Positions 15,001 through 64,000 of a stretch of DNA of 64,000 nucleotides are shown here, in pieces. The notes below the pieces were generated by a model. The model saw nothing but the letters and a program-made list of their open reading frames with translations, did not search any database and had not been told where the DNA came from. Position 1 is the stretch's first letter. The number at the start of each line of letters is the position of its first letter. Location of the stretch: contig OZ281495.1 of assembly GCA_965637545.1 (NCBI GenBank), positions 4,340,001 to 4,404,000 of the forward strand, written 5' to 3'. Made by a program: the position numbers and the translations under genes. Source of the DNA: Phallusia mammillata (taxonomy: Eukaryota).

Positions 15001-15448
15001 AATAACCGTTGGTAATGTATTGTAACTAAACTTTTAGAAAAGACCACCAAACAAGATGTCGTATACTTGAACACCTTAACAGACGGCAAGCAACAAAGTA
15101 CTATAAATAAAATAGAGTTCACGACGCCAGAAAACCTTTATGAGGAAATAATCAATACCGCTTACCAAAACGATGGTGGGTAGAGCAAAATTATATAAAA
15201 TTATATTATATATTGTATTAAGCATCTACTTCGTGTTTTATTTTGTATTGTGGTTTTTGTAGTCAATCAAATGTTTTTAGCATCTTTTCAATGTTTTTTT
15301 AAGGGTTTGTAGTCGATCAAGCCAATTCAAACTATGTTGTGTCGTCGCACATCAAAACAGAAAACCCATACGGTTGGTGAATATTAAAACCTTTTTTTAT
15401 ATTTTTTTGTGTGATGTTTTATATTGTTTTACAGCAACTGGCATCTGA
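12061..15448 (+). CDS. Receptor B: type-I membrane protein, SP + N-terminal domain + sushi + 3 Ig + membrane-proximal domain + TM + tyrosine-motif tail (about 695 aa)
   Basis: 13 phase-consistent exons: 12061-12127, 12190-12561, 12620-12811, 12976-13124, 13193-13322, 13385-13660, 13760-14023, 14089-14211, 14283-14359, 14478-14703, 15038-15175, 15313-15372, 15435-15448. TM is IIIVSCVVGSIVFVAIVIAVVFFY followed by RR. Tail has VVYLN, NLYEEI, TAYQN, SNYVVS and PYATGI*. Confidence 0.85.
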
Positions 15449-16579: not shown

Positions 16580-19500
16580 ATGCAATGTAAATGGAAATAT
16601 TTGATGCTTCAGGAAAGATGTTTAAGGTTACTGTTTTCATTTCTAATATTACTGAAGGAATCTTTTCCGTTTTCAGGTAATTGCAGAATTTGTAAAAATT
16701 TTTCACTAGTAAGTTATTTGCTACTCAGGTTGTGGTTGTGAGAACACAAATTTGACACCACTTTACACCACTTGGGCTTCACAGTACAAAGGGATACTTT
16801 ATAAAGCCGAATTCTGTAATATAGATGAGGTGCAGTGTATACTATCCTGAGAATGAATATTGGGGTTCCAGATCTCATGACCTAACTGTACATTGTCGTT
16901 ACTCAAGTGACATGTGGAAGCACTTGGAATTTGACTACAACGAGTTTAAATCGTCTTTAAAAGCGAATGAAAGTTGTTTTGTTACAACATTGAAAGTAAC
17001 AATCCCTTTAAACAAGTATTTTAACGGCATTAATTTGCAGTTAACCTGCCAAGATGCTTGCATAGTTCAGGATTTCATAATAAATGTCAAAGATAAGTAA
17101 ATGTCTACATTGCTTCGCCACTTCATGAGAGATTGTACTTTTTCTTCAGGTCTAAAAAAGCAAAACCTTTACTTTTGTCCTAATCAAGAAAAACTGTTTT
17201 ATTCAGAGTCAATAAAATTAATTGATACTCAAACGGTTTGTTTGGAATCAGCTCTATGATTGGGTCAGGATGGATTACAATGCTGGAAAGGTTTGCGCAA
17301 GTTTATGTGTTCGTATTAAATCGTTACTTAGCGTGACCAAACGCCGATTGAATTTAACAACGCTAAAATGTTTTTATCTTGATTTTACATTTTTAATTTA
17401 ACAGAATTTTTTTCAAGATGTCGATTTTTTTTTAACTTCGTTAACTTTTATCTACGTTTAGCGCCTATTGTGTCTTTATAACACAACTCGACATCCTGTA
17501 ATGTGGTTGATGATACATTAAGTTTTTCATGTTTATACGATGACACATTGCCACAAGGAAATATGACAAAGTTCGTTGTTGAAGAAAATAATTATGTTTT
17601 TGGAAAAGTTAAGTGTTTTTGACAATAATAATTAATAGTTTTTAATTAAACATATGCATATAATTTATTAAAGGGCCAAACTTTTTTATTTTCCCTACGA
17701 AAACAACACAGCGGTTTACAAATATTTTGTCGAGCTCAAACACTTTTCACACAAATATATGCCGAAAGTAGGACATTGTTTTTATTCCTACGTTGTGTAA
17801 GATTGAATTTTTCTATATTAAATTGTTCAGACAAAACGTATGACGTTGTTTTGAGACCACGTGTGTCAACCGACATCCTTCACTCCGGTTCACGCGCACT
17901 ACTTAATGGAAATCAAGATGTGACGTTGTTTTGTGACACCGATGCCAATCCAAAAGCTAACTGCTCATTTAAATATGCTAATAAGAGTTTAGCATCATGC
18001 GAAATAACTCAAAATGTCAGATCACCATTGTTTGTCACGTGTTTTGCTATAAATGTGTATAGAAATGGGGAATCCCCGTTGCTGGAACTGGTTGTGGTTG
18101 AAGAAAGTGAAAATAAGTAAATTAATTGTAAAAAATAAAAATATAAAGTAACGCACTGCTTTACTAAAACTCCCAGCATAAATGTTGATTTAAATGACAC
18201 TGATCTTATAGTTGCCGGCCATGACGTAACTTTAAACTGCAGCCTTCCGTACCAAGACGAACTAATGGCTTTTTTCAATTGGGAAATCCCATCAGCAAAC
18301 AGGGACGTCGAAACAAGGACCGCGCCTCTGCAACTGAAGAATTTGACCAGATAATGACTGGGGAAATTACTTGTGCTTGACCGACTCTGCATTTGGCAAA
18401 GCATCACACACAAAGTTTTTGGACGTTTATTGTATGTATTTTAGTAACAAACTACAACCGATTCTTGTCAAACTCATACACAATTTGCTAAACTCCATAT
18501 GTCATTAGGCGGCTTGCGACTGAACAGAATGATCTGTTGGAAAAGTTATAATAATTATTACGCTTTAGTCGCCCCTGAAGAGATCGGCTCCCACACTGTT
18601 TGTGATTGGAAGGAAGTGGAAAAGGGAGCTTGTTTGGTTAATTTCAATACAAATCCTGCAACACAATCCTACATGTTGTCGCAAAACGGTGAGTTGATAA
18701 AGTGGATGAATTTTTCCTTCCAACGCTGACACTATATGTGATGTTTTGTAGGTACGAAAGTAGCCTACAATGCAATTCTTGTCAACTTATTTTTCTGACA
18801 ACCACCGAACAAGTGTTTATTCTTAAACTAAACGTAAGTTACTAACCATGGTTTGTATTTTTGTCTAATCGTTTTTTGAGTGTTTAAAGTGATTATCTCA
18901 ATCTGTGTGTCACAAACTGTTTTCTGACTTGATCCTTGGGAAGCTGTTGGTTTGAAAATCACCCCTGATAGCTAAATACATGCCTATTTTTTTCTCGTTG
19001 CGCTAAGTCGCTTACTTTAATTACTCCAGCAGCTTATTTAACTGGCTTTAGGTGTACCAAGCCGGCGCCTGTGAACCAGTGTTTAAAATAATGTTTTACA
19101 CTTATAATACAATTACACATACATACTTATATTACGCATACACTGAACTACAATATTACATTAGTCAACAGGTATTGGTGAAAATTATAGTCTGGCGCTC
19201 TATTCAGCAAGCTTTCCAGACAAACAACTGATTATCGATTTTCAAATTTTATGGAAACCCCACACATCAGGCAGAAACGAAGCTGCAATAATAGTTCTAG
19301 TGTGGTCGGTGGTCTTATGCTTGCTGTTGCTGTTTCTGCAATTGTAGTGATGATTTACAGAAGAAAACAAAACACGACAAAATAAGGCAAGCATGTTTTG
19401 TTTCCTAGCTTTTCAAATTTTCATTTAAATTCATGTATTTTTTTTATGGTGACTGAAAATGTTGATCTGCACGATAACAGAATTTATCTGTTTGGTAATT

Positions 19501-19760
19501 TTAGGAATCAAAAGGAAAACCGATGTTGTTTACGTAAACACTCGTATGGATCACACCCAGCGAATTCAAAAAGTTCTAAGCTTCTCAGATGCGGCAGAAA
19601 ACGCCGTATGTTGCACGCCCCTGGTTGAATGTATCAGGTATAATTTGGCTTAAAATAGAATTAATGCGTCAATTGTACTTTTCAGTTAATGATGTTAGAC
19701 TAAATAATGGAAAGATTTCCATTGCAGACCGAAACGAAGAAACTTATGGTAAATACACTA
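16580..19760 (+). pseudogene. Receptor pseudogene C
   Basis: Signal exon ends at 16676. Exon 2 has a frameshifting deletion near 16840 (GTGCAGTGTATA-CTATCC vs GTGCAGTGGATAGTAAACTATCC in E) and its donor is mutated. The sushi exon is truncated and has TGA at 17257. Two Ig exons are missing. The last Ig exon has TAA near 18353. The TM exon (about 19270-19385) is frameshifted. Tail exon has DVVYVN. Confidence 0.85.
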
Positions 19761-20534
19761 ATTTTTAATGAGCAAAAAGGTCAAACAACTTGTTCAATTA
19801 ATCAAACGTTCTGCCATAAACTGGCTTTCAATCGATGATATATATTTTTGTGTCAAAAAAGATTATTATTTGGTGCTAGCACCCATCAATTTAGTGTTGG
19901 TATATTAAAGGTTTATTTTGTTTTTGTTTCAGCTACTTGTATATAAACGAGAAAACATGCATCGCATCAAACAATCTTTATCCAAATTGGTCTTCATTGG
20001 CTCATACGTTTTTTTATGCAACAAGAGAATTAAGACAAAAAGTAATCTCATGTTGCTATGATGCAGAATCGTTATTTTATTACATGCCTTCCAATTTTGC
20101 CTCAGTCTTAGTTTATTTGAGTTTTGACGGGCGAATATAAACACTACGTTCCCGTTACAATTCAATAAATGTCAGAAAGGAAACAACGTCAGTATAGATT
20201 GATCATGGAACATAACAGTATTAGAAGATCCAGGTTACACACTAAAACAAAATTGTTATTAATGGCAAGCAGGATTAATTTCTTCATCAGCAAAATTAAA
20301 ACTATTTTCAGAATTTATGTTGCAACAATTCTGGCCATTTGTACATAATAGGCTAAGTAATGCCTACGTAAGCGTAGATACAAACACAATCCGGAAGACC
20401 ATAGAAATATGGAACATACATTAAAGCAATAACAGTAAACCGGGTTAAAAATATGCGTCAAAAGCATTCTACGTCTACCCGAACTTCAGGGATAGTATCC
20501 AAATCAAAAACCAAACAACGATTAAACTTGGAAA

Positions 20535-23051
20535 CTATCTTGTGTACAAAATGAAAGCAAATGGAAGCGTGCAAGCGTTCAGCATGCTGTTCATGTTGTT
20601 TTTCTTGTCTTCACCAGCAGGCTAGAGAAAAATAACAGATTTTACTGCTTTGGGGAAAAGAATAGTTTTAATCCTGGGCGCATATTTACCTTTTAATAAA
20701 CTAACTGCGAAGACACTATAAGTTGTTCAAACCGCATTTATTTTTTTACTTACACATCCAACTTTAAAAGATACCCAATAGCTAGAACAAGCAGAGCTCC
20801 AACTACCAAACCAGTAAATATGAGGGCAATCCATCCACCTTCGGGGATAGCTGCAAGCAACACAGTACAGATGTAACTTAGTAGATGAAATAATGTGTTA
20901 AACTTTAAAACACAATATTACCTGTTACGTATTCACCCGGCCCCAAAATTCTTTGATAGCCTACAATTTACCAAAACAAAATAGTTAAAATAAAAGCATC
21001 ATGCAAATGAATTGCTGAAAGTACACATAGATTCGATATATTACTCCCAACAAACTGAGTGCTGTAAGAAGGCTACACTAGCCTATACGGACAATCTCTC
21101 GTCACCAGCTCAACACTGACCAGACCCTATAGGTCGAAACAGTGTGCAATGTCTGCAAAATAGTTTTAAATCATTCACAAAATATGGGAACAAATTTTAC
21201 CTGTTGCTCTACAACTGCCAGTTAACGAAAAGCCGTGATTTGCGCATGTGGCGCGCACTATTCCGTTACAGCCGGTTGGACAAGTCAAATCAACTGTTTG
21301 CCCAACCAACACATTGCCTGTAGACAGTGCTAAACAATTTCCACATTCACCACAAGGTATCGTACCAGAGCAAGTTTCTAGATATTAAATAAGTAGCGTG
21401 GATTTTGCTGGCAACAAAGTTGATGCAACATGTTGTTTTTTTGTTTTTGTAAATATGTTAAAAACTAAATCAATTGGTTTTGAAACAGCTGAACAAACTT
21501 GAGCTTATAGAAATAACATATTATTACCTGGATTGTAGATGACTTGAAACTTGCCAGTGATATCACACACAGCTTGGCCTTTACCCTCCAAACAAGTTAA
21601 TTGTATCACTGTGCCGTAGTTGACACTACCCACAATATTCGGTGAGCACTTAGAAACGTTTAATTCTGCGGTGTTGCAGGTAACTAAAATGTGTGAAAAA
21701 GATATTTGCTTATTAAAAAAGATGTTGCAAATGGTGTTCAAATATTGCGTATATCATTTTTACGGAAAATTAACGTTTAGATTATCTTACCTTTTACACA
21801 ATTATTAGTGTAATTAAAGGTTCCGTCAAACTGACATATTCCGTAAGCTGTTCCTTCGAAACCTTCTGAGCATACAAACGTTATATTCTCTCCAAGATTT
21901 GAACTTGTCGTTAATGATGTATTTACACCGTTTTCGGGAGGTCCGTCACAATCTAAGTTGCACACGATTTGTTACCCAGCTATGGTCATTTTTATTACGC
22001 CTATAAGACTATTATTTCACACAATTTTTATCAGGTAATTACCTAAATTTACCGTGTTTGGAAGAGACATGAAGAAAGGGTAAACTGTTCCCAAGAGGCA
22101 AACTTTGGGAGGAATTTTATCAAAACCATTTGGTGAAATATCTTACAAAACAATTTACCAAAACCATTCGCATCGGTAAAGCTCAGATCAATTAATACGC
22201 AGAAATCCCTAATAAACATTATTACTTATCATTATAAAGTTAAGATGAAGTTAATCTTACCAGCTTGTGCTTACAAGTTATCTTATCTAAAGATTTAGTT
22301 AAGGCGGGCGTTATTCCATTTATTCCTAACCTTCAACCACAGAAAAGACCGCATCTCCAAAAAATGGTTGACCAACAATATCTGGTGCAATCACTACACC
22401 GCTGTCATTTTGATGCACCGGGTTGATTTCCAGAAAAATCATTACTGGGTTGGTGTTGGTAATACTTGAAAAAAAAATCACACTTATGGTTGAAACAAGC
22501 TTAAAACTAGACTTAAATTATTTCGTGGGTTTTGTTATGTTAAAAAAGAAGTAATTAACACGTTTACAGTACAAAGCGTTGTACACCTTGTGCTTTTCCA
22601 CTAAATGGAAAAAGTTACATCTCCATTTGTTTGTTTTGACAATATTTTATTAGGTTTGTCAGATGTTTACCTAGTAATTATTCGAGCTTCTGTAGATGGT
22701 GTACATGACACAGATCCAGAAGAATAATCGCAAGTCGAAATCGTCTTGAAAAATACAAAGTACCTAAAACCTTATTCCACTTGTAGTTTAGTTCACACAC
22801 AACAGAATTACTTACCTTTCCACCAACATTCCAATCTAGAAGAAAATTTCTTCTTGACACACCAAGAAAAAGCTGTGCAACTGAACCTTCAATCTGTTTT
22901 CCGGTTGTGGTTCCCAACTGAACAGGCGGATAAACTGCAAAGCAAAGAACATTGCGAACAATCAGCCCCAATAAATGTGCATCTACGTACCTAATTGTCC
23001 ATAAGATTGACTCATTGTCCACATAAGAATAAGTAATGAGAACTTGAACAT
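20535..23051 (-). CDS. Gene D: single-TM protein with an atypical Ig-V-like domain and 3 sushi/sushi-like domains, short tail (fester-like architecture)
   Basis: Minus exons: 23051-22991 (MFKFSLLILMWTMSQSYGQL), 22934-22816, 22744-22671, 22464-22331 (LEINPVHQNDSGVVIA), 22141-22043, 21952-21791 (CDGPPENG...ITFVCSEGFEGTAYGICQFDGTFNYTNNC), 21683-21528, 21377-21201 (VDLTCPTGCNGIVRATC), 20960-20922 and TM exon 20850-20754 (WIALIFTGLVVGALLVLAIGYLL). 3' exons are ambiguous; both alternatives I could build give a short tail. Confidence 0.75.
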
Positions 23052-24426
23052 TGCGTATTTTTGCACAGGCACGAAGTTAGATTTCCTGCGTTAAACACAC
23101 GACCGTTTCTCTTATAATATCAGACAAGCTGTGTTTGGTAATGGAACGGGATTGCTACACCGGAGTTGCGAAAATGTTTGCACAGTAAAACCAATAAAGC
23201 GCCAAACAGAAAAAAAAGTCTTGCGGGTTTTGAATTGAAACAAAATGAAACAATTTTACCGTTATTCCGAGCAAGCTAAAAAACAGAGTTTAATGTAGAA
23301 AAGGATAACAGATGATTTAACATTTAAATTCGCATTTGTCACCAAAATATTAGTTGTAGAAAGTATTTGATTCCAATGCTATTGCAGAAACAGCACGTTT
23401 TAATATTTTTCAGCTTAGCAATAAACTTTATTTGTTTTCTAAGTAGACCGTAGACTGAAGGCCCGTGCTGATGTCGTTATGAATGTATTATTACTTTATG
23501 ACCAAATTGCAATGATTTGGCTCTATACTGGTGCAGTGCTCTTGAACTTTTTTTGTTGTACCTCCTTTATAATTTTCAAGCCACTTTGTATACCTCAAAA
23601 ATAGCAATCGTTTTAACTAATAATAAGTTGTTTGGTCAAGCGTCCTAATTGCATACTAGGCACAGGAAATTTAGCATACAAAGTTAAAAACAACAAAAAT
23701 CAAAGGTTATTTAATTGTTTTGACAAATCTGGACCTATCGTGATGTTAGCTCGTTAAAAGATTTCCTCATTAAAAAAATCAGTTTCGGATATTTAGTTCT
23801 GTTCGTATAACCCAATGTCAACAAGACTGGGAAACCCTTTATTACTGTACACAGAAAAAGCACAATGACTTTTTTGGACAAAGTAACATGCCCAACACTA
23901 AGTCTGAGCATGTGAGTGGTGCATTGCTTCATATTCTTGTTTATACTTTATAATTCGCTTTACCGACGCAACAATCCCACAAAAAAACCCATCACGAAGT
24001 AAAAATAACAGAACGCAGTTCCTTACTGACAGTATCCTTAAAACTAGTAGTGTAGCCTTCAGTAGCACTGAGTCAAGTTATATTTACTGCGTATTTAACA
24101 TCGTTGCATTATATGCTCTAGTTTTAATGTAAGATACACTAGCGTATACAGAATATCTAATGGAAGAGCAATGCGACAGTGTCACTAGTCGTAGCAATTT
24201 GATTCCTAAACAGTTGATTTGTAAGCTACAAATTACGTTTAAAGAAAATTAGTGGTTCATATTTTCGATAGAGTAGCTTACTACTCGTGTCCTGCTTAAG
24301 ACAATACACAAAACATCAGAAACTTGTCAGAATGCTTTGTGTTTCTAATTTTTTTTTCTGATTAAATTCCCGATCAAACAGCACACACTTTGTTTCTTTC
24401 AAGTATTAAAACAGCACAACAGACAA
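23052..24426. promoter_or_regulatory. Putative bidirectional promoter between divergent genes D and E
   Basis: The start codons of D (minus, 23051) and E (plus, 24427) point away from each other, 1.4 kb apart. Positional inference only; no TSS data. Confidence 0.45.
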
Positions 24427-27400
24427 ATGTTCAAATCCTTCGTGTTGATTATTTGGTGTGGATTATCTGCCAGTTGGTGCAGCGTAGATAGTGAAGGTAT
24501 GTTTCAGCAAAATGGGCAGATTAAGTAACATGACAAAACAAACAGAAAAGAAAATGTTTTAGTATCGTTATCGAATTAAAGGTCATTTTTATATTGGTGC
24601 GAACTTACGGCCTATTAAGTTGTAAGAAAATCATTTGGGACTTTATTCATATTTTTTATAACTTATATAAACGGTTTTGCTTGACATAGTTTTGTATACA
24701 CTTGTGAGCCAGATTTTAATTGTCATCAGTGGCGCAGTAACGATCAAAGCGAAAAAAATAATATGTGAAGAAAAGCAATCATTGCGATAAAATACTAGCC
24801 AACTAAACCACCCAAATAGCTTATGGTGTCAACCACTGTGGTTTTTGGTTAACTTAAAGAAGTGAAAATGTTTAGATTGCAGTTGTGCCTATACTATTTT
24901 CTCACCGAATTCCACGACATGGGGATCGCAATACAAAGGAATATTATATACAGCCGAATTCTGCAATGCTGGTGAGGTGCAGTGGATAGTAAACTATCCT
25001 AATAATGAACATTGGGGTTCAGAAAGATCTGATGAAACTACATATCATAATCGAGAAACTGGAGAGTGGGAGCACATAAAGTTTAACTACAATGAATTTA
25101 ATTCGTCATTACAAAAAAATGAAAGTTGTATTATTACAACACTGGAAGTTGCTACACCGTTAAACCAGTCTTTTAACGGCACCAATTTACAATTAGCTTG
25201 CTCGTGTGTTTCTTGTATCGTCAATGATTTCATCATAAACATTCAAGGTAAAAAGTTACACCGGTTTTCGCCCCTATGTTATGTGCTTTACTGGATCATG
25301 TATCCAATTTAGGTTGCGGTCAAGCTTTACACGATGGCGTGAGGGTGATATCTTCAAATGGTTACGATTTTAATTCACCGGCAAACTTTAGTTGCCAGAA
25401 CAATGCAAAACTTTTCTATGCTAACGGAACGGAATTGAATGATACCGAAACTGTTTGCTTACAATCAGCTCAATGGTTTGGTCAGGAAGGATTACAATGC
25501 TGGAAAGGTTTGCTAAATTTAAAAGTTTAATATTTACCTTGTGCAAACAAATGCAACTTTGAATTTCTTATTTAGCAAACATATTTGCAGTTAAAAATAA
25601 ATAACAATATTGAAGTGGGAGCAGTGCAATTTTTATTTTACTTTTATTATTTCTACTATTAAAAGACGAATCCTCCAGAGCAATAAATATATCTTCTGTG
25701 TGTGTAGAGTGTCAGTAAAATGTTTAATGTCTTTTTTAGCACCAACAAATGTTACGTTGCAACACAGCTCGACATCTTGTAATGTGGTTGGTGAAACATT
25801 AAGTTTGTCATGTTTATACGACGATACATTGCCACAAGGAAATATGACAAGCTTTTTCATTGATGGTGAAGTTCACAATGTTACAAAAGTTGAGTAACAA
25901 AATCTTTAAAAAAATGATTTTTGTTCATTTAGTTTAGAGAACAGCAATCATTTATGTGGTTATAAGGTTATTTTTGTATTTAAGGGCAAATCACACTTAT
26001 TTCATCTTAAACAAGAACACAACGGTTCAAAGATATTTTGTCAAGCTCTAACGTCTTTTACAAATGTTTATTCCGAAACTGGAAGATCCGATGTATTTAC
26101 CATCAATGTATTCTGTAAGTTAAATTTAAGTGTTTTTCCACTGCATTTTTTGAATTTACCTGAAAACGTTTAGCACAACCTGGAAACGTGAAAGCAACAT
26201 TTGATACTTCGGATGGCATCATCAAGTTTGGTACAAAGGTGTTACTTAATTTGTTTCAAATCGTTCCACTTCATTGCACGAGTGACGTGAATTCCGCTGG
26301 CTGCGTTTGGAAGTTTAATAATTTTTCATTTTCTAACTCATGTGACGTTAGTCAACACTTCAACCAATCAGGTTTTTTCACGTGTAGTGTTTCAAATTGT
26401 GCTGGATCCGAAGAAAGTGAAAGAAAGCAAATAGTTGTTGTAGAATCAAGTAAGTTTGTATCGGTTTCGAGGCGTATGTAACCTGAATAAGACGTAGCGA
26501 AATATTTATTGCAGGAACAGCAAAAATTAATCAAACAAACTCTCCAGTTATTGAAGGACATACGTTGGTGTTGCACTGTGAGGTTGATTACCAAAAAGAG
26601 CTTAATACAACGTTTCAATGGATCACTCCATCGAACGGAGTCGCTTCCAATACATCAACTCTACGTGTAGACAATATTACTCGATTTGATGGCGGGAATT
26701 ATGTTTGTAGAACAAGTGACTTGTTTGAAAACTCTTATGTTGATATTCGTATCGATGTTCTGTGTAAGTTGATTTGCCTGGCAGCAACAGTTTATTTTAA
26801 ATTTTATTAAAGCACCGAAACGTCCTGTATTAAAAGTTGTTCCATGTATTATTCTTTTTTAAGATCAACCGTATGACGTATTACTCCTCACTCCAGAAGA
26901 CTCTGGCAATATCGTTCATACCGGTTCAATTATACTTATGAATGGAAATCAAGATTTGAAGTTAAATTGTGACAGCAATGCAAACCCACAAGCTAACTGC
27001 ACTTTTCAATTTGCTAACCACACTTCTGAATTTTTCGGCTCTTGCGAAACAACACAACATATAAATTCACAGCAATTAGCTTCTTGTTATGCTGCTAATA
27101 TGTATGGAAATGGAAGTTCACCAACTATGGAGTTGGTTGTACTTACAGAAAATAAAAGTCAGTATTTAAGTGTTATAGAAAATTAGCTGACCCTTAACGT
27201 ATACTTGGTTTTGCAGAAATGCCTGCGATAACAAACGACTCCAACAACTTGAATCAAATTACAACTCAACAAAATCTAACTTTGAACTGCAGTGTGTTGT
27301 ATCAAAATGAGCTGAATACGACGTTTCTATGGAAAATACCCTCAAGTAATCGGGACCCTGATCAACGTGGTTCTGTTTTAAATTTAAACAATTTGACAAG

Positions 27401-30400
27401 ATTTGACTGGGGAAATTACACTTGCATTACTGTCAATGATTTTGGAACTAGGCAAAGTATGGTGTTCTTGAATGTTTTATGTGAGTGTTTGCTAACTGAT
27501 GTACCAACACATTAGCCTACCTAGTGTTTACAAGTTGTTTTTTTGCTTAGTTCAACCAGGTTTTGAACAGGTCGAAGCTGTCAACTGCAGCTATAACGAC
27601 GTGGAACACGGAACCTGTCTGTTTCCTTTTTCTTCCAATCCTTCAGTTGATGACTGGATGCTAACAACTAATGGTAAACAGCTTGCTGTTGTTGATTCGA
27701 AATGACCTTTTTTGAAAGATGTAACAATATTGGATATTTTGCAGGCACAGAAGTTAACTGCCCATCTTGCAACATTATCGTTTATGAAGGAAACACTCAA
27801 CAAACATTTCATTTAAACCTAGTAGGTTCTTGTCTGATTTTAATCGGTGACCTTGTATCATTTGTTAAAATGTTTTGTTAAACACTGTGCCACATGAAAG
27901 ACTGTACAAAGCTAACAATACGAATCATTCCCTAAATCATGTTTCTGCTTTTCTATTTTAGGCCACATATAAACTGACGTATTGTTTTTGTTGCCCACAT
28001 GTCTTGATGTAAAATGTTTTATGTTCAAAATACCTAAGCAACGAAGTCAATAAAGACGATTCACTAAATAACTGGACGTAATGTTCTTGAAAAAAAAAAT
28101 ATTATTTTAGACAGCTGCAATGGATCAGAAATACAAGCTCAGCCTAAGATCGAGTTTATTTCCCGATGCACCGCTTATTGCTTACTTCTACGTTACTGGG
28201 AAGTCCAACGTAACCATTGCTCCAACTCCACCAGGCCCTGACGATCATATTATAGTAATAGCTGCAAGTGTTGTTGGAGGTATTGCGTTCGTTGCCATAG
28301 TGATTGGTGCAATCGTGTTTTTCTGCCGTCGAAATCACACTCCGAAGACAACAGGTAAAACATGTTATAAATATGAACGTTTTGTCTTGCGCAGAGTTTT
28401 GTGTAGTAAAGTGTACATCTCAGTTGTGACATTTAGTTCAAAGAATATTGCAACTACGTTTGCAAGCATGGTTAGCTTATTTAGATTCAATTGAAGTTTG
28501 CTGACTGCACGGTATCCAAACACAATAACAGTAATGCTGTCAAGTATACGCTCCAAGTATTTAGTTCTTGGTAGTGGGTCCATGCAAACAAATTAAAGCG
28601 AAGAGTCTAGGCCATGTCGTTCTAGATTTAAACAAAGGCTAGTTCAAAATTTGTGTGATACTGATTACCTTATACCGCCTGGACTTGCCGTAACGGATGT
28701 GTACAATTAAGTTGCTTTTCTACGACAGATATCACAGACAATACCTACCTAAGACCGTTTTAGATTATTATTGCTTGTTAATGTCTCTAAGACTACTTGT
28801 AACAGAAACTTTAATTTTTATTCGGGTTCATTGCCCCAGCTCTCTTATCTCATTTCCGCCACCTAATTTCCAATAACTAACATTTTCAGAACAAACGCCC
28901 AATGACGCGCCTCACGATGTGTACGCTGCAGTTAACCCCAAAACCAAAAGTGAGTCAAATTGCTATTTTGCTCTGACCAGACTTTTTTTAAAAATAATGC
29001 TTTATAGAAACCAAGGTTGAAACAGAAGAGCAAATAAATCCAATATACAGTGGCCAGGAGAATCCCGATGAAATACCGGAAGCATATGGTTCCACATCAG
29101 GTCATGATTTCACTATTTTTGTCTTGTTAAGAACACGCATTTAGCTAAGATAGATCTAAAGCATATGACGTATGACAGGCACCAACCGTGACCAGCAAAC
29201 CGTAAGATACATTCATACACGTCTAGTCAATGTCAATAGAAAACAAACAATAATTAATTATCTCATATTTTGTTATTTGACTGCAGGTTAATAAAATAAT
29301 GTTTGTGCTAATTTACTTTTTTGATCGTAAAAATGCAGAGAAAGAAGAAAGAGTCAATCCTGTATATGCATCGCATGCATTTCCTATGGAGGAGGAAGCT
29401 TATGCAAAAGTGGACAAGACTAAAAAAAACGAAGGTTGAATAGCAAAAATAAAATAATAAGTTTGTAAAAGTTGGTCTTGTTTAGAAAAAGAAGATAAAA
29501 TCAACCCACTTTACACATCCCACGATTTTACCGCTCAAGAAGAACCTTATGCCCAAGTTGATGTGACAAAGAAGAACAAAAGTAATCCATTATAATGTTT
29601 AATAATATATTTAATACTGTTTTAAAGACTCTAAGTTATATTTGCTTGCAGTCAAAGTCGAAAAGACCAACCCACTTTACCAAGCCTACCAACCACCTAT
29701 AGACGACTCCAATAGCAACGGTTTAAGTAGCAGTGAAGGTGGAATTGATTCAAAAGTTATTTGGCAATATTGGTTTAAATTTGAAGATTCATTGACAAGT
29801 TTCTGTAAAACCACATTTCAGCTGTACTTACTGTGTTTGTTGTTTTTCAAAACAGCCTCGGAAAAGAAAGAACAAATAAACCCTTTTCATGCCGCACCAC
29901 AGCAGCTAACTGGAGACATACAAGACGCATATGCCATGGTTGTAAAGAAAAAACGGCCTGCTGGTACAAAAAACTTGGTTATTTTGTGTTCAAAAAAATA
30001 AAATCACAATATGCTTTAAATACAGAAGACAGCGACGAAAAACAAGAAAGACTGAATCCTTTATATTCTGTTTCACATCAATCTTCATCTGGCGACACTT
30101 ATGCAACAGTCGACAAATTAAAGCAGGGTAAATGTCATGTACAACCTAAGTTAAACTAGTTATAAATAATTCAAAAACTATGGCCTAGACACCAAGGGAT
30201 CCCAAAAGAAAACCAAGAAACCTCCGATTAAAAAGAAGCCAGTCATGCCGCCTAAAAGTATGTAAAATTTATGCATTAGTATTTATAGGTGAATACATAT
30301 GTAATCTTTATTTGTTGCAGAGCAGCAGTATCCAACATCTGATCTGCATTCAAAAAACGTAAGCATTGTTGATGTTTTAAAAAAAACTCTTAACGTCATT

Positions 30401-43500: not shown

Positions 43501-45360
43501 GATTTAATGACGTCATTTCTATGGGAAATTCCCTCACATGACCGTAACGTCAATCTGAACAGAGCGTTGGTAGAATTACACAATTTGACTGGTTATGATT
43601 GGGGGAATTATTCATGCACGACCAGCAATACGTTTGGGAGGTCAACAAGTGTACTCTTTCTAGATGTTTGGTGTAAGTAAACATAAGTGGCAACAGCAAT
43701 ACTTTACTTTTTGGTTGATAAGCTTTCAAGCGTATTTTTTACAGTTGCACCAGTTCCACAATTTAGCAATGATGTTAATTGCAGTCATGATGATGTGGAA
43801 AGCGGAACTTGTATCTTTCAATTTTCATCCAATCCTTCGGCAGACTCATGGGCGTTGACAGCTAATGGTATTTGTGTTTTATGTTTTGCTTTCTTTTACG
43901 AACACGAAGTTTAGTTGTTTCAATGGTGAGCTTCAAAAAATTCTTTACTTTATTTAATAAAACAGCCTTTAATGTGTTTTTTTCGCAGGTTCTGCAGTTT
44001 CTTGTCCGTTTTGTAGCATTTCGTTCGACAGCAAGATTTTCCAAACTTTTCACCTGAACATGGTGCGTATACCAATAACAAAACAACGGCTAATCGCTAT
44101 ATGCTGGTTATTTTTAGTATCCTAATGTAATGTTATGTAAATAACAGACAGATGGATGTTCTTTAAGTAGATCAGCTAACTATAGGCTAGTCTCATGATT
44201 CTTTTCTGCATCTAAAGAAAGCATCGGTTGGGGCAGCGGTTCTTTTACTGGGCTCCGCGGTCCTTTGGGAATCCGTAAAGCAATTTTGCGGGGACCGCGA
44301 AAAGGTTAAAGTACTTCTATAAACTTACGCGTAATTGTTCTACCTAATAACTGCAACTTAAGTTTTGTTTTCCTAAGATACACATGCCAGCTAACGACCG
44401 CCAGCCCTTCATATAATGGCAAAGCGACCGATTAGGGCAAAATAATGAAAAAGTTTAAGAACCACTCGGTGAGAGACACCTTGACGAAAACATGTTTGAA
44501 ATAATCCGACAAATTTCGACTTGTTTCAGTCAACCACGCGCGATGAAACATTTGAGCTAACTATTACATCCACATATTTTCCTCATGCTTCACTTACTGC
44601 ATATATTTACGTCTCTGGGAATCCAACACCACCAGGCACTGGTAATCAATCAGCGATAATAGCTGCAAGTGTTGTTGGAGGCATTGTGTTCGTTGCTGTG
44701 GTGATTGGTGCTGTACTTTTGTACCGACGAAATTACACCTCGAAAAAATCGGGTAAACTATTTCTTAGCACACGCAGATGAACTTGTGAGAGACCTAATG
44801 TTTGAATTTGGCATTTCTGCCCCTACTAGTTCCCGATGTAAAATATGGATTTTGATTACGTTAAATTTAAGGTGAAATGGATTGTTTCTTTATGCCATTG
44901 TTTTTTTTCGTGCGTTTCGAAGTTTTGTTATGTTTCTTGAGGTTTTGTAGATGAATCAAAAAAGTTTGTCTTTTCAAACACACGCAACAAGTTTAGATCA
45001 GAAAAATAACTGCATACAATGCGTTTCAGGAGGAACTGACAATCAAGATGTGATTTACATTAACACAACAGAGAACAGACGACCAAATACATCAGCTATT
45101 GATAATTTACAATCACCAGAACACGAATACCCAGACGACCAAAGCCACATATATGTGAACGATGGTAAAATCTAATGAAAAACTCGCATAAAGTTTGGAT
45201 GATTTTACTTTTTGCATTTTGTAGTCGAGATGCCAGGACCAAAATACGAAACAGTTTCACTTTCTCCAAACGATAAAACTATGTATGGTGAGTAAAAGAA
45301 TGGTTAAACTTTGTTTTTGTAACCAACTTTTTCGTTGTTTTTGCAGCAACGGACATCTAA
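40594..45360 (+). pseudogene. Receptor F: full-length architecture (5 Ig) with two frameshifts
   Basis: All family exons are present, from signal exon 40594-40660 to terminal ATDI* at 45360. Exon 2 is 313 nt (not a multiple of 3; deletion near 40885 gives TGA). The second half of Ig2 (42149-42279) is 131 nt vs 130 nt in A, B, E and H. TM is AIIAASVVGGIVFVAVVIGAVLLY. Tail has VIYIN, HEYPD, HIYVN, PKYETV and MYATDI*. Confidence 0.8.
44234..44467. mobile_element. hAT-like MITE in an intron of F; related copy at about 55576-55700 in the same intron of H
   Basis: Termini CAGCGGTTCTT ... AAGAACCACTC. The internal CGGTCCTTTGGG(A/G)ATCCGT is shared with the H copy. TSD is degenerate. Confidence 0.55.
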
Positions 45361-59254: not shown

Positions 59255-61870
59255 GGTGTTCTTCCAGTGTCAATGTTGCAGCAACCACAAGCGGATTTTC
59301 TGCATTTACTGAATCACAAGTGTTTCTGCAACATGATCGAAATGTGACAATCAATTGTTATCCCGATGTTGCAAATCCCAAAGCAACAATACCGATGCGG
59401 TTTCTTGTTCCAACACCATTTATTTCAATGAAACATCCACTGCTAATTGCATTGTGAGTAACAAAGTCGGATATGCAAGCAGCGAAACTTTGGATGTTGT
59501 TGTCATATATAAAAGTATGGTATGCATTTAGTTTTTTCTCATTACCGTCATACTTTTACAACTAATCTACATGTACAGGAAATTCCAGCCTTTAAACACT
59601 CGAACAGCCGCACGTCCATGAACAACCTGGAATTTCATACCTCAAGGTCGCTGACTAATCTACAGGCAAACGTAAACAAGGAACTCGTTTATGTTGACAA
59701 TCGGATGCGCCACAATAAACTATCGCTTAATACGAGTAAAACAACGTATTTACTGTTTTGTCCAACCAAGCGCTCAAACACGCAGAAGTTTTCGACTTTC
59801 GTAGGATCGCAGCAAATACAGCAATCAACAGAAACGAAATACCTTGGAGTTAATATCGACGATCAGTTAAAATGGGAGAAACACATAGCCCATGTGGAAC
59901 GAAAACTGGCAAAAGCCTGCAGTATTATGTTCTGCGTGACTACTTTGGACAACAGTTTCTCCGTATTATTTACTACTCTCTTGCGTACCGCTATCTGCAA
60001 TATGCCGTCGCGGCGTGGGGTAGCGGAGACGCTGCATCAATTAAAACGCTTAACATCAAACATAATAAAATTTTGCGAGCTATTACTCGCAGCCCCTACC
60101 GATGTCGCGCTACTCCACTATATCACGACTTGCGTCTTTTAAAATTCAAAGACATTTACAAACTTGAGGTAGCCAAACTATTACATGCGTTTCGTACTGG
60201 TACACTACCTTCCACATACAACTCCCTGTTCACACCCATTGCGTCAGTGCACCACTACAACACCAGAAGGGCTGAAAACCAGAACTACTTTCATCCACGC
60301 GTAAACACCGCGTTCGGCACAAGATCAATTTGTCATCGTGGTCCAAAAGTATGGGAAGAATTACCACACGATATCAAGTTTCTGTCACGCTCGTCCTCTT
60401 TCAAAAAACAGCTGCGCTTACATTTATTAAAGAAATATGACCCCTCAACAATTAATTCACTTCCGGGTCCTCGCTTATACCATGCAGAATACACATAACA
60501 GAGCTTGTTCTCCTATGTCATAACTACCCTAGTTTTCACTTTTTTTGTGTGTGTTTCAGTTTTATCTTAGTGTGATTTTAATTTTAATTTTTTTTTATTC
60601 TATACTATTATATCATTAAACTGGATAACTTGGTCACATACAAAAGAACAAAATACTGCCGTAGGTTTCGTTTTTTTTTTCAGTTCGGCCATCCGAGTCC
60701 AAGACAGTGCAGCACCTTCCCCAGCGAACAACATCTGAGATGTCGTCATCGATCTTACAAAAGCAGAGGAGGAGATGCTCGACGGCAACATTCCCGTCGT
60801 AGCAACAAACTGTCCTCGGGACACCCGGGTCTGCCTACGGGATCACAGGAAACGTTCCGAGGAACCGAGCTGGTGTTTCCGTTTAGGCGGGTTTCATACG
60901 GCCAGCAGAAACTGCGGGTTCAACTACCGTCTTATGCAGCCGGACGTACCCCGCCAAGCTTGTGCTGTCGGTTGTGATCCTACGGCAGAACATACCTACA
61001 ACGGAATTCAACCACAATTCAAATAACAGGACACATGACTCGATAACCTACGGTTTTTTCGGTGTCCTTGCTGTTTACGTATCCGTTCAACAATGGAACT
61101 GTGATGATGATGAAGTGACTATGCAAATAAATTTGATTTGACTTGTGCTATACCCAACTTACGAATTGTGGATCTCAACAGTCCAACTTTGTTTTTATCT
61201 AGTTTGACAAGATTTGATTTAGGAGATTATGCTAGTCATACACAAAACCAGTTTGGAAACGACACAAATACGTTGTGTTTGAACGTGACATGTAACAACT
61301 GTATTCCCAGAACGGCTGCCTTTTTTGCTTGGGACGGTGTTTATTGCATTGGTGGTTTTTGTCTGAAGAAAGCGCTCTTTTAGGCAACGGGTCAATTTTT
61401 TTCTAAATTCACTTAGTCATGTGAAAAAGAAAAAAAATCCTGAATCAGTTTGCTGTTTCTTCAAAGCATATTGTTTAAGGTATGACATTCGCAGGATACA
61501 AACAAAATACTCAAGCTACTTACGCTAATTCTGTAGAAGCTTTGAGGAATGACGAGGATCATAGCAGCGACCGAACTGACCAAATCACTGTACATTATTA
61601 TCGTAAAAACTATTTCTACTAACAAAACATCTTCTTGAATATTCAGTTGCCTTTGCTTGTTTTATTTCAGAAACAGAAATAAGCAATTGTTTCGCATTGC
61701 ATAAACCGTTTAACAGTCACGAGTATTCGGAATTAGGTTAAATGAACAAGAGCCGGACAGGTAAATTCACAGAAAAATGTTTGCTTTTGGTTATTATTTC
61801 GTGTCAATTGATTATTAGGTGCTTATGAAACAACTATTTTAGAGAAAACCTTACCAACGTACAAAAATTA
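59255..61870 (+). pseudogene. Decayed receptor I: Ig exons and tyrosine-motif tail exons interrupted by a LINE
   Basis: Frameshifted Ig5-like exon at about 59255-59510 (VTINC..ANPKA / TANCIVSNKVGYASS). Ig6-like remnant at about 61140-61291 (SSLTRFDLGDYASHTQNQFG). Candidate tail exons at 61495 (ATYANSV), 61671 (HEYSELG*) and 61820 (AYETT). No TM exon found. Confidence 0.55.
59560..60600 (+). mobile_element. 5'-truncated CR1/L2-type LINE (C-terminal reverse transcriptase region, frameshifted)
   Basis: ORFs 59522-60142 and 59872-60498 encode NKLSLNTSKT...KYLGVNIDDQLKWEKHI and IYYSL..RYLQYAVAAWG...LYHDLRLLKFKDIY, typical of CR1/L2-clade ORF2 ends. A T-rich 3' region follows. Confidence 0.85.
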
Positions 61871-62922: not shown

Positions 62923-64000
62923 CTAAGTCTCTAACTCTATGTCTGTTTTAACTGGCTCATCAGAACAGGGGCAACAGCAGCAGCAGCAGCAACAACACTT
63001 GAGGTGCTTCATGATAAAATCAATAACAGCTTTGATTCCTGCCAAACACAAATATTACAAAAATATTTTTGTTCTAAAAAATATTTTTATGCGCAAAAAT
63101 GTTTGTAATTGATTTTTATTTTCGAAAATAGTAATGATTTTTGCTTACCACTCCAAATGGCCATCAAACATTTTTTTATAGCCTCCCAAATGCATTTCCA
63201 ATTCCAGAAATGACCGGTAAAACAGCCAACAATAAATAAACCGACTATCAGTATCGCCCAGAGCCAGTCTGGTAAAGCTGTAAACGATAAAAACATTGAC
63301 AACAGCTCTATGCAAAGTTCGTTGAACTGGCACAATGTAAATTCTTACCTGAGCAGTTCTTACATGTTGACACTTTACCAGAAGTGCAATAAGAAGAGAC
63401 AACAACTATACCTTCCTTCTGACATCTCGCCACAGCAAACCCGTTACATCCGACGGGACAAGTCAAATTCACCAACTCATTGTATTGAATTGTAGCTGGA
63501 CTGTTGTCATATTTACAATCCTCTTCACAATCACTTTTACATGGTAAATATTCATTCAAGTAACAAACCACTGCAAAATAGAATCAGGGCATTAAAAAAA
63601 TCGTTTTGTCAATAAACCAAAGAATACGGAAAAACAAAGAGTGTGTACCATTTAATTATAACATGCAGAAGTTCGCTCTAGGCATGAGCTGTCCTTAATT
63701 TATTGTGAATGTTGTTGTTTTTTCCGCTAGTGAAACACATAACTGACATCATTACACAATTAACAAAAAACGAAATATTCGTTTCAAATTATACAATATG
63801 GACACAACAATCGATGCGAAAGTCGCATTTTCTCTCTGCATTATGTATGAAATGCAACCAAGGGCGATTTGTTCACTTGTGTAACGTCACCTGGTTGGCA
63901 AGGGTTCGTGACGTTCAACAACTTGTTGGCTCCACAAACAGCTGTAGAATTTCCACTGCAACCATCAGGACAAGTCATATTGATACTTTCTCCAAACCGT
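62923..64000 (-). CDS. Gene J (partial, runs off window): paralog of D with sushi-like repeats, one TM and a poly-cysteine tail
   Basis: Minus exons: beyond 64000-63891 (INMTCPDGCSGNSTAVC), 63570-63379 or 63349 (VNLTCPVGCNGFAVARC, matching D's VDLTCPTGCNGIVRATC), 63277-63149 (TM WLWAILIVGLFIVGCFTGHFW) and 63038-62923 (GIKAVIDFIMKHLKCCCCCCCCCPCSDEPVKTDIELET*). All exons are phase 1. Confidence 0.8.

What the first reader, a model, noticed from the sequence alone, without database searches (positions are those of the whole stretch)
20535..24496. Head-to-head D/E pair sharing a 1.4-kb intergenic region
A multi-sushi gene without a signalling tail and the most signalling-rich receptor start 1.4 kb apart on opposite strands. 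A bidirectional promoter would co-express a recognition chain and a signalling chain in the same cell (inference).
Basis: partly seen in the sequence, partly recalled or inferred. Interest (0 to 1): 0.75.

Follow-up and report, generated by a model that had tools for sequence, protein, structure and literature searches.

The report
Head-to-head sea-squirt receptor gene pair
Two surface-receptor genes of a sea squirt, one with a short silent tail and one with a long signalling tail, start 1.4 kb apart on opposite strands, as in the paired 'fester / fester co-receptor' genes published in 2025 for tissue compatibility in the colonial sea squirt Botryllus; the layout is real but no longer new, and co-expression is untested.

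Summary
Gene D (minus strand, ATG 23051, stop 20535) reads as ten GT-AG exons in one open frame of 367 residues. It has a signal peptide, a ~109-residue N-terminal domain split over three exons, three sushi modules, one membrane span and a tail of at most 35 residues with no tyrosine motif. Gene E (plus strand, ATG 24427) has a single-exon first domain, a sushi-like exon, several Ig exons, one membrane span and the richest tyrosine tail in the window. The two ATGs are 1,375 bp apart. One independent 3.5-kb DNA contig spans the junction without a difference.

In Botryllus schlosseri, Fester-family (FF) and fester co-receptor (FcoR) genes lie head-to-head in cognate pairs and are co-expressed. 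The first Ig domain is one exon in one partner and three in the other (PMC12582321). D/E fits this layout, including the 3:1 exon rule.

D is not a canonical FF member: it has one membrane span instead of three, and three sushi modules instead of one. No RNA evidence was obtainable, so a shared promoter and co-expression remain inference. Five loci of a distant relative (Clavelina) showed no such partner. Verdict: a real pair and a new variant of a known kind, of moderate interest.

The parts
22991..23051 (-). D exon 1: ATG and signal peptide (20 codons plus 1 base, ends in phase 1)
   Evidence: GT donor; hydrophobic core followed by SQSYG
22816..22934 (-). D exon 2: first third of the N-terminal domain
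   Evidence: AG/GT sites; the only open frame that joins exon 1
22671..22744 (-). D exon 3: middle third of the N-terminal domain
   Evidence: the alternative acceptor upstream runs into a stop
22331..22464 (-). D exon 4: last third of the N-terminal domain, with V-domain-like F/G-strand motifs (DSGVV, FGDAVFSVV)
   Evidence: motifs read from the sequence; fold not tested
21791..21952 (-). D exon 5: sushi/CCP module 1 (phase 1-1)
   Evidence: Pfam PF00084, E 1.9e-4, 22.2 bits, above the 20.7 cut-off
21528..21683 (-). D exon 6: divergent sushi-like module 2 (phase 1-1), lacking the fourth cysteine
   Evidence: aligns with exons 5 and 7 and with the J modules; no Pfam hit
21201..21377 (-). D exon 7: cysteine-rich sushi module 3 (phase 1-1), motif LTCPxGCNG shared with gene J
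   Evidence: AlphaFold2 pLDDT 76.4; nearly all of the top 50 Foldseek PDB matches are CCP modules, TM up to 0.65, but E no better than 0.13
21071..21157 (.). High-copy interspersed repeat inside D intron 7
   Evidence: summed contig depth about 121,000 against about 150-480 around it; the only part matched by the probable RNA runs
20922..20960 (-). D exon 8: 13-codon stalk exon (phase 1-1, so it could be skipped without a frameshift)
20756..20850 (-). D exon 9: the single transmembrane segment (model residues about 311-333)
   Evidence: Kyte-Doolittle maximum 2.7; no other hydrophobic window in the model; no further TM exon down to 19650
20535..20621 (-). D exon 10: short cytoplasmic tail and stop; two alternative splice choices give even shorter tails
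   Evidence: no YxxL/I/V, NPxY or YxN motif
23052..24426 (.). Spacer between the two start codons, 1,375 bp, 34% G+C
   Evidence: no blastn match elsewhere in the window; no Rfam family; no meaningful repeats; its ORFs hit no Pfam family; no strict TATA on the E side
23110..23119 (-). TATA-like TATTATAAGA, about 65 nt upstream of the D ATG; motif only, at chance level in this AT-rich DNA
   Evidence: read; strict TATA motifs occur about once per kb per strand in the window
24427..24496 (+). E exon 1: ATG and signal peptide, ends in phase 1
   Evidence: GTATGT donor
24876..25247 (+). E exon 2: the whole first domain in one exon
   Evidence: AlphaFold2 pLDDT 75.6, nine-strand beta sandwich; weak V-set matches
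25313..25507 (+). E exon 3: sushi-like module (four cysteines and the conserved tryptophan, phase 1-1)
   Evidence: pattern read; no Pfam hit
25601..27702 (+). E Ig-like exons (about five domains plus a small membrane-proximal one); limits are ORF limits, not splice sites
   Evidence: Pfam Ig_3 E 1e-8 on two exons; the 26173-26442 exon is 53-68% identical to paralogues A, B, F, G
28111..28354 (+). E membrane-proximal and transmembrane exon
28890..30159 (+). E cytoplasmic tail exons: 5 NPxY and 5 (D/E)xYAxV, including DVYAAV and EEEAYAKV
   Evidence: motif scan; exon structure not rebuilt by me
62923..64000 (-). Gene J (3' part only): a D paralogue with two sushi-like modules, a TM exon like D's and a short poly-cysteine tail; its 5' end lies beyond the window
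   Evidence: phmmer of the D model against window ORFs, E 6.6e-5 and 1.7e-4

Best explanation
D and E are a divergently transcribed pair of receptor genes, of the kind described in Botryllus as Fester-family / fester co-receptor (FF/FcoR) cognate pairs.

Shown: both genes are intact and start 1,375 bp apart on opposite strands. D is a single-pass membrane protein with an N-terminal domain in three exons, three sushi modules and a short tail without motifs. E is a single-pass receptor whose first domain is one exon. It continues with a sushi-like module and Ig domains, and its long tail carries ten tyrosine motifs, one of which fits the Botryllus 'core-2' consensus.

Inferred: the pair arose and is kept as a unit. 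The spacer carries regulatory DNA that serves both genes, so one cell makes both chains. The chains associate through their ectodomains or their small-xxx-small transmembrane motifs. D then adds a second binding face, while E carries the phosphotyrosine signal.
For: - D gene model with canonical splice sites and one open frame.
- Sushi modules in D.
- A single membrane span and a motif-free tail in D.
- E domains and tail motifs.
- An independent DNA contig across the junction.
- Published precedent (PMC12582321): FF and FcoR genes lie head-to-head, are co-expressed, vary in copy number as pairs and obey a 3:1 exon rule for the first Ig domain. D has three exons and E has one, so the rule is met.
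- E's DVYAAV fits the [A/D]VYxxV core-2 motif, and its xAYAxV units resemble the Botryllus YAIV/YAIL motifs.
- A second D-like gene, J, lies on the minus strand at the end of the array. Unverified scan notes place a plus-strand receptor with an E-type tail just beyond it.
- A second set of DNA contigs over D exons 4-6 is 90-95% identical, differs in 14 nonsynonymous and 12 synonymous codons and has no stop. This fits a polymorphic or recently duplicated live gene.
Against: - There is no RNA, start-site or chromatin evidence. The probable RNA runs gave no contig on either gene.
- D fails the three-transmembrane feature of FF and has three sushi modules instead of one.
- E has more Ig domains than FcoR.
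- The Ig fold of D's N-terminal domain was not tested. That of E's first domain is only weakly supported (Z below 8, mixed with unrelated sandwiches).
- No sequence-level link to Botryllus FF or FcoR was obtained.
- The transmembrane segments have no charged residues of the kind that tie vertebrate receptors to their adaptors.
- Five Clavelina loci of distant E-like genes show no divergent sushi partner within 10 kb.
- A lone minus-strand gene in a plus-strand array is bound to face one neighbour.
Confidence: 0.5

Rival explanations
1. Plain adjacency. D is an independent sushi-type membrane protein, for example a complement-regulator-like or adhesion molecule. It has its own proximal promoter and happens to sit, inverted, inside a tandem array of Ig receptors. 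There is no functional or regulatory coupling with E.
For: Divergent orientation is expected for about a quarter of neighbours. A TATA-like motif lies about 65 nt upstream of the D ATG, compatible with a separate core promoter. Five of the seven or so E-like copies in the window have no partner. No partners were seen in five Clavelina loci. D fails the FF three-TM test.
Against: The combination matches a published paired system in several independent respects: domain order, a motif-free tail against a tyrosine tail, and the 3:1 exon rule. The second D-like gene, J, also lies inverted at the edge of the array. According to unverified scan notes it faces a receptor with the same rare tail type as E.
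Confidence: 0.3
2. A linked ligand-receptor pair. D is not a co-receptor but a polymorphic membrane ligand recognised by E-type receptors, on the same or another cell. It is kept next to its receptor so that matching alleles are inherited together.
For: D has no signalling capacity. A second D-like sequence in the same DNA sample differs mostly in the ectodomain, with 8 replacements within 19 residues of sushi module 2. From about 21.36 kb onward the contig depth is about half that of the flank, as expected if the two haplotypes are too different to merge. General knowledge: self-recognition systems often keep receptor and ligand genes tightly linked, for example the Ciona s-Themis/v-Themis loci (recalled, not checked here).
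Against: Nothing here shows binding. The second sequence may be a paralogue and not an allele. The Botryllus precedent interprets the short-tailed partner as a receptor subunit, not a ligand.
Confidence: 0.12
3. D is not a working gene: a decaying copy or a model that does not correspond to a real transcript.
For: No RNA contig covers it. Word and profile searches found no close relative of any D piece. The 3' end has three possible splice choices.
Against: Ten exons with canonical sites keep one frame open over 1,104 nt, and the domain exons are all in phase 1-1. The second D-like sequence has no stop in the parts seen, and about half of its changed codons are synonymous. The paralogue J keeps the same module and TM exon design.
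Confidence: 0.08

Closest known systems
Botryllus schlosseri Fester family (FF) / fester co-receptor (FcoR) cognate gene pairs (Rodriguez-Valbuena et al., PNAS 2025, PMC12582321; preprint PMC11507803; review PMC12065747)
   Same: Both systems are head-to-head pairs. One partner has a signal peptide, an N-terminal domain, sushi and a short tail without tyrosine motifs. The other has a first domain, sushi, Ig domains, one TM and a tail of tyrosine motifs. The first domain is three exons in one partner and one exon in the other. The pairs sit in tandem arrays that also hold unpaired co-receptor genes. One tail motif here fits the core-2 consensus [A/D]VYxxV.
   Different: D has one membrane span, not three, and three sushi modules, not one. 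E has about five Ig-like domains after the sushi, not two, and its tail is dominated by NPxY plus (D/E)xYAxV repeats, with no canonical ITIM. The source is another ascidian whose proteins are not in the databases searched. Co-expression, polymorphism and any role in allorecognition are unknown here. No sequence-level homology to FF or FcoR was established.
Vertebrate receptor chains encoded by divergent neighbouring genes, such as CD3 gamma and CD3 delta (recalled from memory, not checked here)
   Same: Two chains of one surface receptor complex are encoded head-to-head, roughly 1.5 kb apart, and expressed in the same cells.
   Different: The CD3 chains are close paralogues and both signal. 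D and E have different architectures, and only E has signalling motifs.
NK-cell paired receptors with signalling adaptors (KIR or Ly49 with DAP12; recalled)
   Same: The work is divided between a chain without signalling motifs and a chain with tyrosine motifs. The families evolve by birth and death in tandem arrays.
   Different: Association there depends on charged transmembrane residues, which D and E lack. The adaptors have minimal ectodomains, whereas E has a large one. The adaptor genes are not adjacent to the receptor genes.
Ciona vCRL1, variable complement-receptor-like 1 (recalled)
   Same: A polymorphic ascidian membrane protein built from CCP/sushi modules.
   Different: vCRL1 is described as carrying its own tyrosine motifs, and it is not known as one half of a divergent pair.

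Membership tests
Fester family (FF), for gene D | Signal peptide, type I orientation | tested here: met
   Exon 1 encodes MFK + hydrophobic core + SQSYG; the single TM lies near the C-terminus.
Fester family (FF), for gene D | N-terminal Ig-like (often V-type) domain | tested here: inconclusive
About 109 residues with a W in the expected C-strand place and DSGVV / FGDAVFSVV motifs like V-domain F and G strands, but without the canonical cysteine pair. No Pfam or PDB sequence hit exon by exon.
Fester family (FF), for gene D | Sushi domain directly after the Ig-like domain | tested here: met
   Exon 5 hits Pfam Sushi above its cut-off. D has two further sushi modules, which FF proteins lack.
Fester family (FF), for gene D | Three transmembrane domains | tested here: not met
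   One hydrophobic segment in the model. No further TM exon in the 1.1 kb downstream, up to the end of the neighbouring gene C.
Fester family (FF), for gene D | Short intracellular tail without tyrosine signalling motifs | tested here: met
   At most 35 residues under every splice choice; the only tyrosine is in ...ILYTR-stop.
Fester family (FF), for gene D | Encoded head-to-head with a cognate FcoR gene | tested here: met
   ATGs at 23051 (minus) and 24427 (plus); the contig spanning both.
Fester family (FF), for gene D | 3:1 rule: the first domain is three exons in one partner and one in the other | tested here: met
   D has exons 2-4; E has the single exon 24876-25247. All E-like genes in the window that I could read have a single-exon first domain.
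Fester family (FF), for gene D | Alternative splicing of short exons between sushi and TM | not testable with these tools
   Exons 6, 7 and 8 are all phase 1-1 and so could be skipped, but no RNA covers the gene.
Fester family (FF), for gene D | Sequence homology to Botryllus FF proteins | not tested
   No Botryllus FF sequence was at hand as a reference.
Fester co-receptor (FcoR), for gene E | Type I protein with one TM | tested here: met
   Signal-peptide exon; TM exon 28111-28354.
Fester co-receptor (FcoR), for gene E | N-terminal Ig-like domain | tested here: inconclusive
   AlphaFold2 pLDDT 75.6, nine strands. Foldseek best Ig-type matches have E 0.014-0.2. VIA-align Z 5.4-6.7 to CD200R, CD96, TCR V and nectin D1, but an unrelated sandwich scores 7.5. 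The published FcoR values are similarly weak.
Fester co-receptor (FcoR), for gene E | Sushi as the second domain | tested here: inconclusive
   Exon 25313-25507 has the four-cysteine and tryptophan pattern and phase 1-1, but no Pfam hit. Not folded.
Fester co-receptor (FcoR), for gene E | Exactly two further Ig domains | tested here: not met
   About five Ig-like exon units follow, two of them with Pfam Ig_3 E 1e-8.
Fester co-receptor (FcoR), for gene E | Tyrosine motifs in the tail (ITIM, hemITAM, core-1, core-2) | tested here: met
   DVYAAV fits core-2. EEEAYAKV is hemITAM-like, with V in place of L. There are five YAxV motifs (which also fit the core-1 YxxI/L/V form) and five NPxY motifs. 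No canonical ITIM (compared).
Fester co-receptor (FcoR), for gene E | Co-expression with the cognate partner | not testable with these tools
   No RNA contigs on D or E in runs X3, X6, X8.

The most novel reading that the evidence does not exclude
The paired design (a short-tailed Ig-plus-sushi chain encoded head-to-head with a tyrosine-tailed Ig-sushi-Ig receptor, one with a three-exon and the other with a one-exon first domain) is older than the botryllid compatibility locus. It survives in a distant ascidian in a simpler form, with a single-pass, three-sushi partner. In this form, pairing is reserved for the receptor subtype with the NPxY/YAxV repeat tail. That would make the FF/FcoR system an elaboration of an ancestral ascidian two-chain receptor, not a botryllid invention.
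Probability: 0.3. Interest if true: 0.7.

Novelty: new variant of a known kind. Interest (0 to 1): 0.5.

Why it matters
Allorecognition genes are said to appear without homologues outside close relatives (PMC12582321). In the paper library searched, only three Botryllus papers mention FcoR.

A pair with the same logic, in an ascidian distant enough that its proteins match nothing closely in the databases, would suggest an older origin. The two-chain, head-to-head design may then predate colonial tissue fusion and serve some wider recognition task.

It would also give a simpler version, with a single-pass partner, in which to test whether such pairs form heterodimers and whether they share regulatory DNA. 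As it stands, this is one verified pair, one probable second pair, and no expression data.

Tried and rejected
- **Word search, D exon 7:** no candidate at all.
- **Word search, kinase ORF at 666-1715:** run to place the species. The only hit was a 31% identical plant kinase, so the source species and its close kin are not in that collection at comparable lengths.
- **Large profile search:** It gave 38 hits, mostly bacterial or generic Ig proteins. Among the ten hits whose sources I looked up, only two were ascidian, both weak: Clavelina lepadiformis XP_076800662 and Phallusia mammillata CAB3264085.
- **One hit taken for an ascidian scaffold (P0007):** it proved bacterial.
- **Clavelina synteny:** five loci with 10-kb flanks show no divergent sushi neighbour, and tblastn with the D model and J modules found nothing. 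This is weak negative evidence, because the genes are distant and the Clavelina genes are far larger.
- **RNA evidence:** no listed run holds the stretch as RNA. The three probable RNA runs match only the intron repeat.
- **The spacer:** no paralogous upstream sequence, no Rfam family, no repeats of note, no Pfam family in its ORFs, and TATA motifs at chance density.
- **Similarity of the D and E signal-peptide exons:** local alignment p about 0.03 before correction for nine comparisons. Rejected as not significant.
- **PDB sequence search with D exons 2 and 4:** nothing.
- The fold of D's three-exon N-terminal domain and a D-E complex prediction are therefore missing. The joined D translation was used only inside local scripts, for the frame check, hydropathy, and phmmer/tblastn against the window and the fetched loci.


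Full report
**Setting.** The window is AT-rich (about 35% G+C), has no N, and has short introns. The only animal relatives found for its receptor exons are from the ascidians Clavelina lepadiformis and Phallusia mammillata, so the source is most likely an ascidian. The matches are weak (41-45 bits), and a kinase ORF found nothing close. The species and its near kin are therefore not in the protein collections searched.

The plus strand carries a tandem array of paralogous type I receptors:
- A, about 5.8-9.1 kb
- B, about 12.1-15.2 kb
- C, about 16.8-19.8 kb
- E, 24.4-30.2 kb
- F, about 40.6-45.2 kb
- a TM-and-tail fragment at 48.6-49.2 kb
- G, about 52.3-55.3 kb

Two genes with sushi modules lie on the minus strand: D inside the array and J at its end.

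**The observation.** I rebuilt D by hand on the minus strand and checked it by script.
- It has ten exons, every intron is GT-AG, and the frame is open for 1,104 nt, giving 367 residues. The ATG is at 23051 and the stop at 20537-20535.
- Exon 1 is a signal peptide.
- Exons 2-4 together encode an N-terminal domain of about 109 residues.
- Exons 5, 6 and 7, each in phase 1-1, encode three sushi-type modules.
- Exon 8 is a 13-codon stalk, exon 9 the only hydrophobic segment, and exon 10 a short tail.
- Two other 3' splice choices give still shorter tails. None carries YxxL/I/V, NPxY or YxN.
- No second or third membrane-span exon is visible in the 1.1 kb down to the end of gene C.

E starts at 24427. 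Its signal-peptide exon ends at 24496 in phase 1. The gap between the ATGs is 23052-24426, 1,375 bp.

A 3,539-nt contig from a public DNA run spans 22353-25891 without a single difference. That stretch covers D exons 1-4 (exon 4 all but its last 22 bases), the spacer and E exons 1-3.

**Is D 'multi-sushi'?**
- Exon 5 passes Pfam's Sushi threshold (22.2 bits).
- Exon 7 has no Pfam hit. Its AlphaFold2 model (pLDDT 76.4) matches almost only complement-control (CCP) modules among the top 50 PDB hits. These include factor H, the poxvirus inhibitor SPICE, C6, beta-2-glycoprotein I, DAF, CD46 and CR1. TM-scores reach 0.65, though E-values are no better than 0.13 for so small a domain.
- Exon 6 aligns with both, but lacks the last cysteine.

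**Is E the most signalling-rich receptor?** A motif scan finds five NPxY and five (D/E)xYAxV in E's tail region. A, B, C and F have only two or three tyrosine motifs of another type (YxNT, YEE[VI], YxND). Within the window the claim holds. This agrees with an earlier scan note on E's tail (s1-408634), which I checked only at the level of motif counts.

**What it is.** That scan note mentioned 'fester co-receptors', which led me to the literature. Rodriguez-Valbuena et al. (PNAS 2025, PMC12582321) describe the following in Botryllus schlosseri.
- The Fester family (FF) has a signal peptide, an N-terminal Ig-like domain, one sushi, three membrane spans and a short tail without tyrosine motifs.
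- The fester co-receptors (FcoR) have a signal peptide, Ig, sushi, two Ig domains, one span and a tail with ITIM, hemITAM, core-1 or core-2 motifs.
[quoted passage not shown] D/E reproduces this.
- The partner without motifs faces the partner with tyrosine motifs.
- Both begin with signal peptide, a first domain, then sushi.
- D's first domain is in three exons and E's in one (24876-25247).
- E's DVYAAV fits the core-2 consensus [A/D]VYxxV. Its xAYAxV units recall the Botryllus YAIV/YAIL motifs. EEEAYAKV is hemITAM-like, with V for L.

**Where it departs from the known families.**
- D has one membrane span, not three, so a tested defining feature of FF is not met. It also has three sushi modules, not one.
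- E has about five Ig-like exon units after its sushi, not two, and no canonical ITIM.
- E's first domain is a confident nine-strand sandwich (pLDDT 75.6). Its resemblance to V-set domains is only moderate: Foldseek E 0.014-0.2, and VIA-align Z 5.4-6.7 for CD200R, CD96, TCR V and nectin D1, with an unrelated sandwich at 7.5.
- D's N-terminal domain shows V-like F and G strand motifs (DSGVV, FGDAVFSVV) but no canonical cysteine pair. Exon-by-exon searches gave nothing.

That step, and any search or fold with the joined D or E protein, was left out. I therefore file D/E as working like an FF/FcoR pair, without claiming membership of those families.

**Promoter and co-expression.** Nothing could be shown.
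- No listed run holds the stretch as RNA.
- The three probable RNA runs I laid on it match only a high-copy repeat in D's intron 7, at 21071-21157. Contigs show presence, not absence.
- The spacer has no similarity to any other part of the window, including the upstream regions of the paralogues.
- It has no Rfam family, no notable repeats and no protein family in its ORFs.
- A TATA-like TATTATAAGA lies about 65 nt upstream of D's ATG, and there is no strict TATA on E's side. Such motifs occur about once per kb per strand here, so they carry no weight.
- A polypyrimidine-AG just upstream of E's ATG would allow spliced-leader trans-splicing. In that case the promoter position cannot be read from the sequence at all (inference).

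**Recurrence.**
- J (62923 to beyond 64000, minus strand) is a paralogue of D. Its modules share LTCPxGCNG with D exon 7, and its TM exon shares the A-[IL]-P-[DE]..W...I..GL.[VI]G pattern. Its tail is short and free of tyrosine motifs, with nine cysteines in a row.
- J's 5' end points out of the window. Scan notes, which I could not verify, place a single-exon first domain 2.6 kb beyond the window's end and an NPxY/(D/E)xYAxV tail 6.0 kb beyond it.
- That would be a plus-strand receptor of E's tail type facing J. If true, both D-like genes pair with the same rare tail subtype, while A, B, C and F are unpaired.
- Across species the test was weak. Clavelina has at least 40 distant E-like genes on one chromosome. 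Five loci with 10-kb flanks show no divergent sushi neighbour and no tblastn match to D or J. Botryllus also has an FcoR-only cluster, so unpaired arrays do not argue against pairing elsewhere.

**Polymorphism (side observation).**
- In the DNA run, contigs identical to the window have depth about 260-320 at 20.4-21.1 kb, but about 140-160 from 21.36 to 26.2 kb.
- A second set of contigs, 90-95% identical, covers D exons 4, 5 and 6.
- Their 30 listed differences hit 26 codons: 14 are replacements, 12 are silent, and there is no stop. Eight of the replacements fall within 19 residues of sushi module 2.
- No second contig was laid on the spacer or on E's first domain at 90% likeness.
- This fits two strongly diverged haplotypes, or a recent paralogue. 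I cannot tell which.

**Verdict.** The pair is real and its parts are as described. The functional reading is plausible and has a published precedent, which removes most of its novelty. What remains new is the occurrence outside botryllids and the variant form of the short-tailed partner. Co-regulation is untested.

Noticed in passing
window:21071-21157: A short interspersed repeat in D intron 7 has a summed contig depth of about 121,000 in the DNA run, against about 150-480 around it. It is the only part of the region matched by the probable RNA runs.
   Followed up: partly
window:21361-26198: Contigs identical to the window have about half the depth of those at 20400-21119. A second, 90-95% identical set of contigs covers only D exons 4-6 (14 replacement and 12 silent codon changes, no stop). 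This suggests either two very different haplotypes or a recent D paralogue.
   Followed up: partly
window:62923-64000: Gene J, a D paralogue on the minus strand, has two sushi-like modules, a TM exon like D's and a tail with nine consecutive cysteines. Its 5' end and its presumed head-to-head partner lie beyond the window.
   Followed up: partly
window:8880-9130, 15016-15180, 19453-19650, 44951-45172: Receptors A and B share a short tail with the ordered triad YxNT, YEE[VI], YxND, sequence types known as Grb2- and Src-family SH2 targets; C keeps only YxNT, and F keeps YxNT and YxND. This tail type is different from E's.
   Followed up: no
window:3282-3542: An isolated, inverted copy of a receptor first-domain exon lies on the minus strand upstream of gene A, probably a duplication remnant.
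   Followed up: no
window:48586-49232: A partial duplicate of gene F holds only the membrane-proximal/TM exon and tail exons.
   Followed up: no
window:666-1715: A 350-residue open frame with a protein kinase domain (Pfam E 5.6e-27) has no close relative in the word search (best hit 31% identity, a plant kinase).
   Followed up: partly
window:58230-58412 and 59513-60495: Transposon debris lies between G and J: a hAT dimerisation domain (Pfam E 1.5e-6) and long open frames that look like a retroelement but hit no Pfam family.
   Followed up: partly
window:22991-23051 and 24427-24496: The signal-peptide exons of D and E both start with MFK, both end in phase 1 and align weakly (p about 0.03 before correction for nine comparisons). 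This is not significant, but would fit an old inverted duplication.
   Followed up: yes
L001, L003-L006 (Clavelina lepadiformis OX392440.1, 24.4-26.0 Mb): Clavelina has at least 40 distantly related multi-Ig receptor genes clustered within about 1.6 Mb of one chromosome. The genes span 7-24 kb, far larger than the 3-6 kb genes here.
   Followed up: partly
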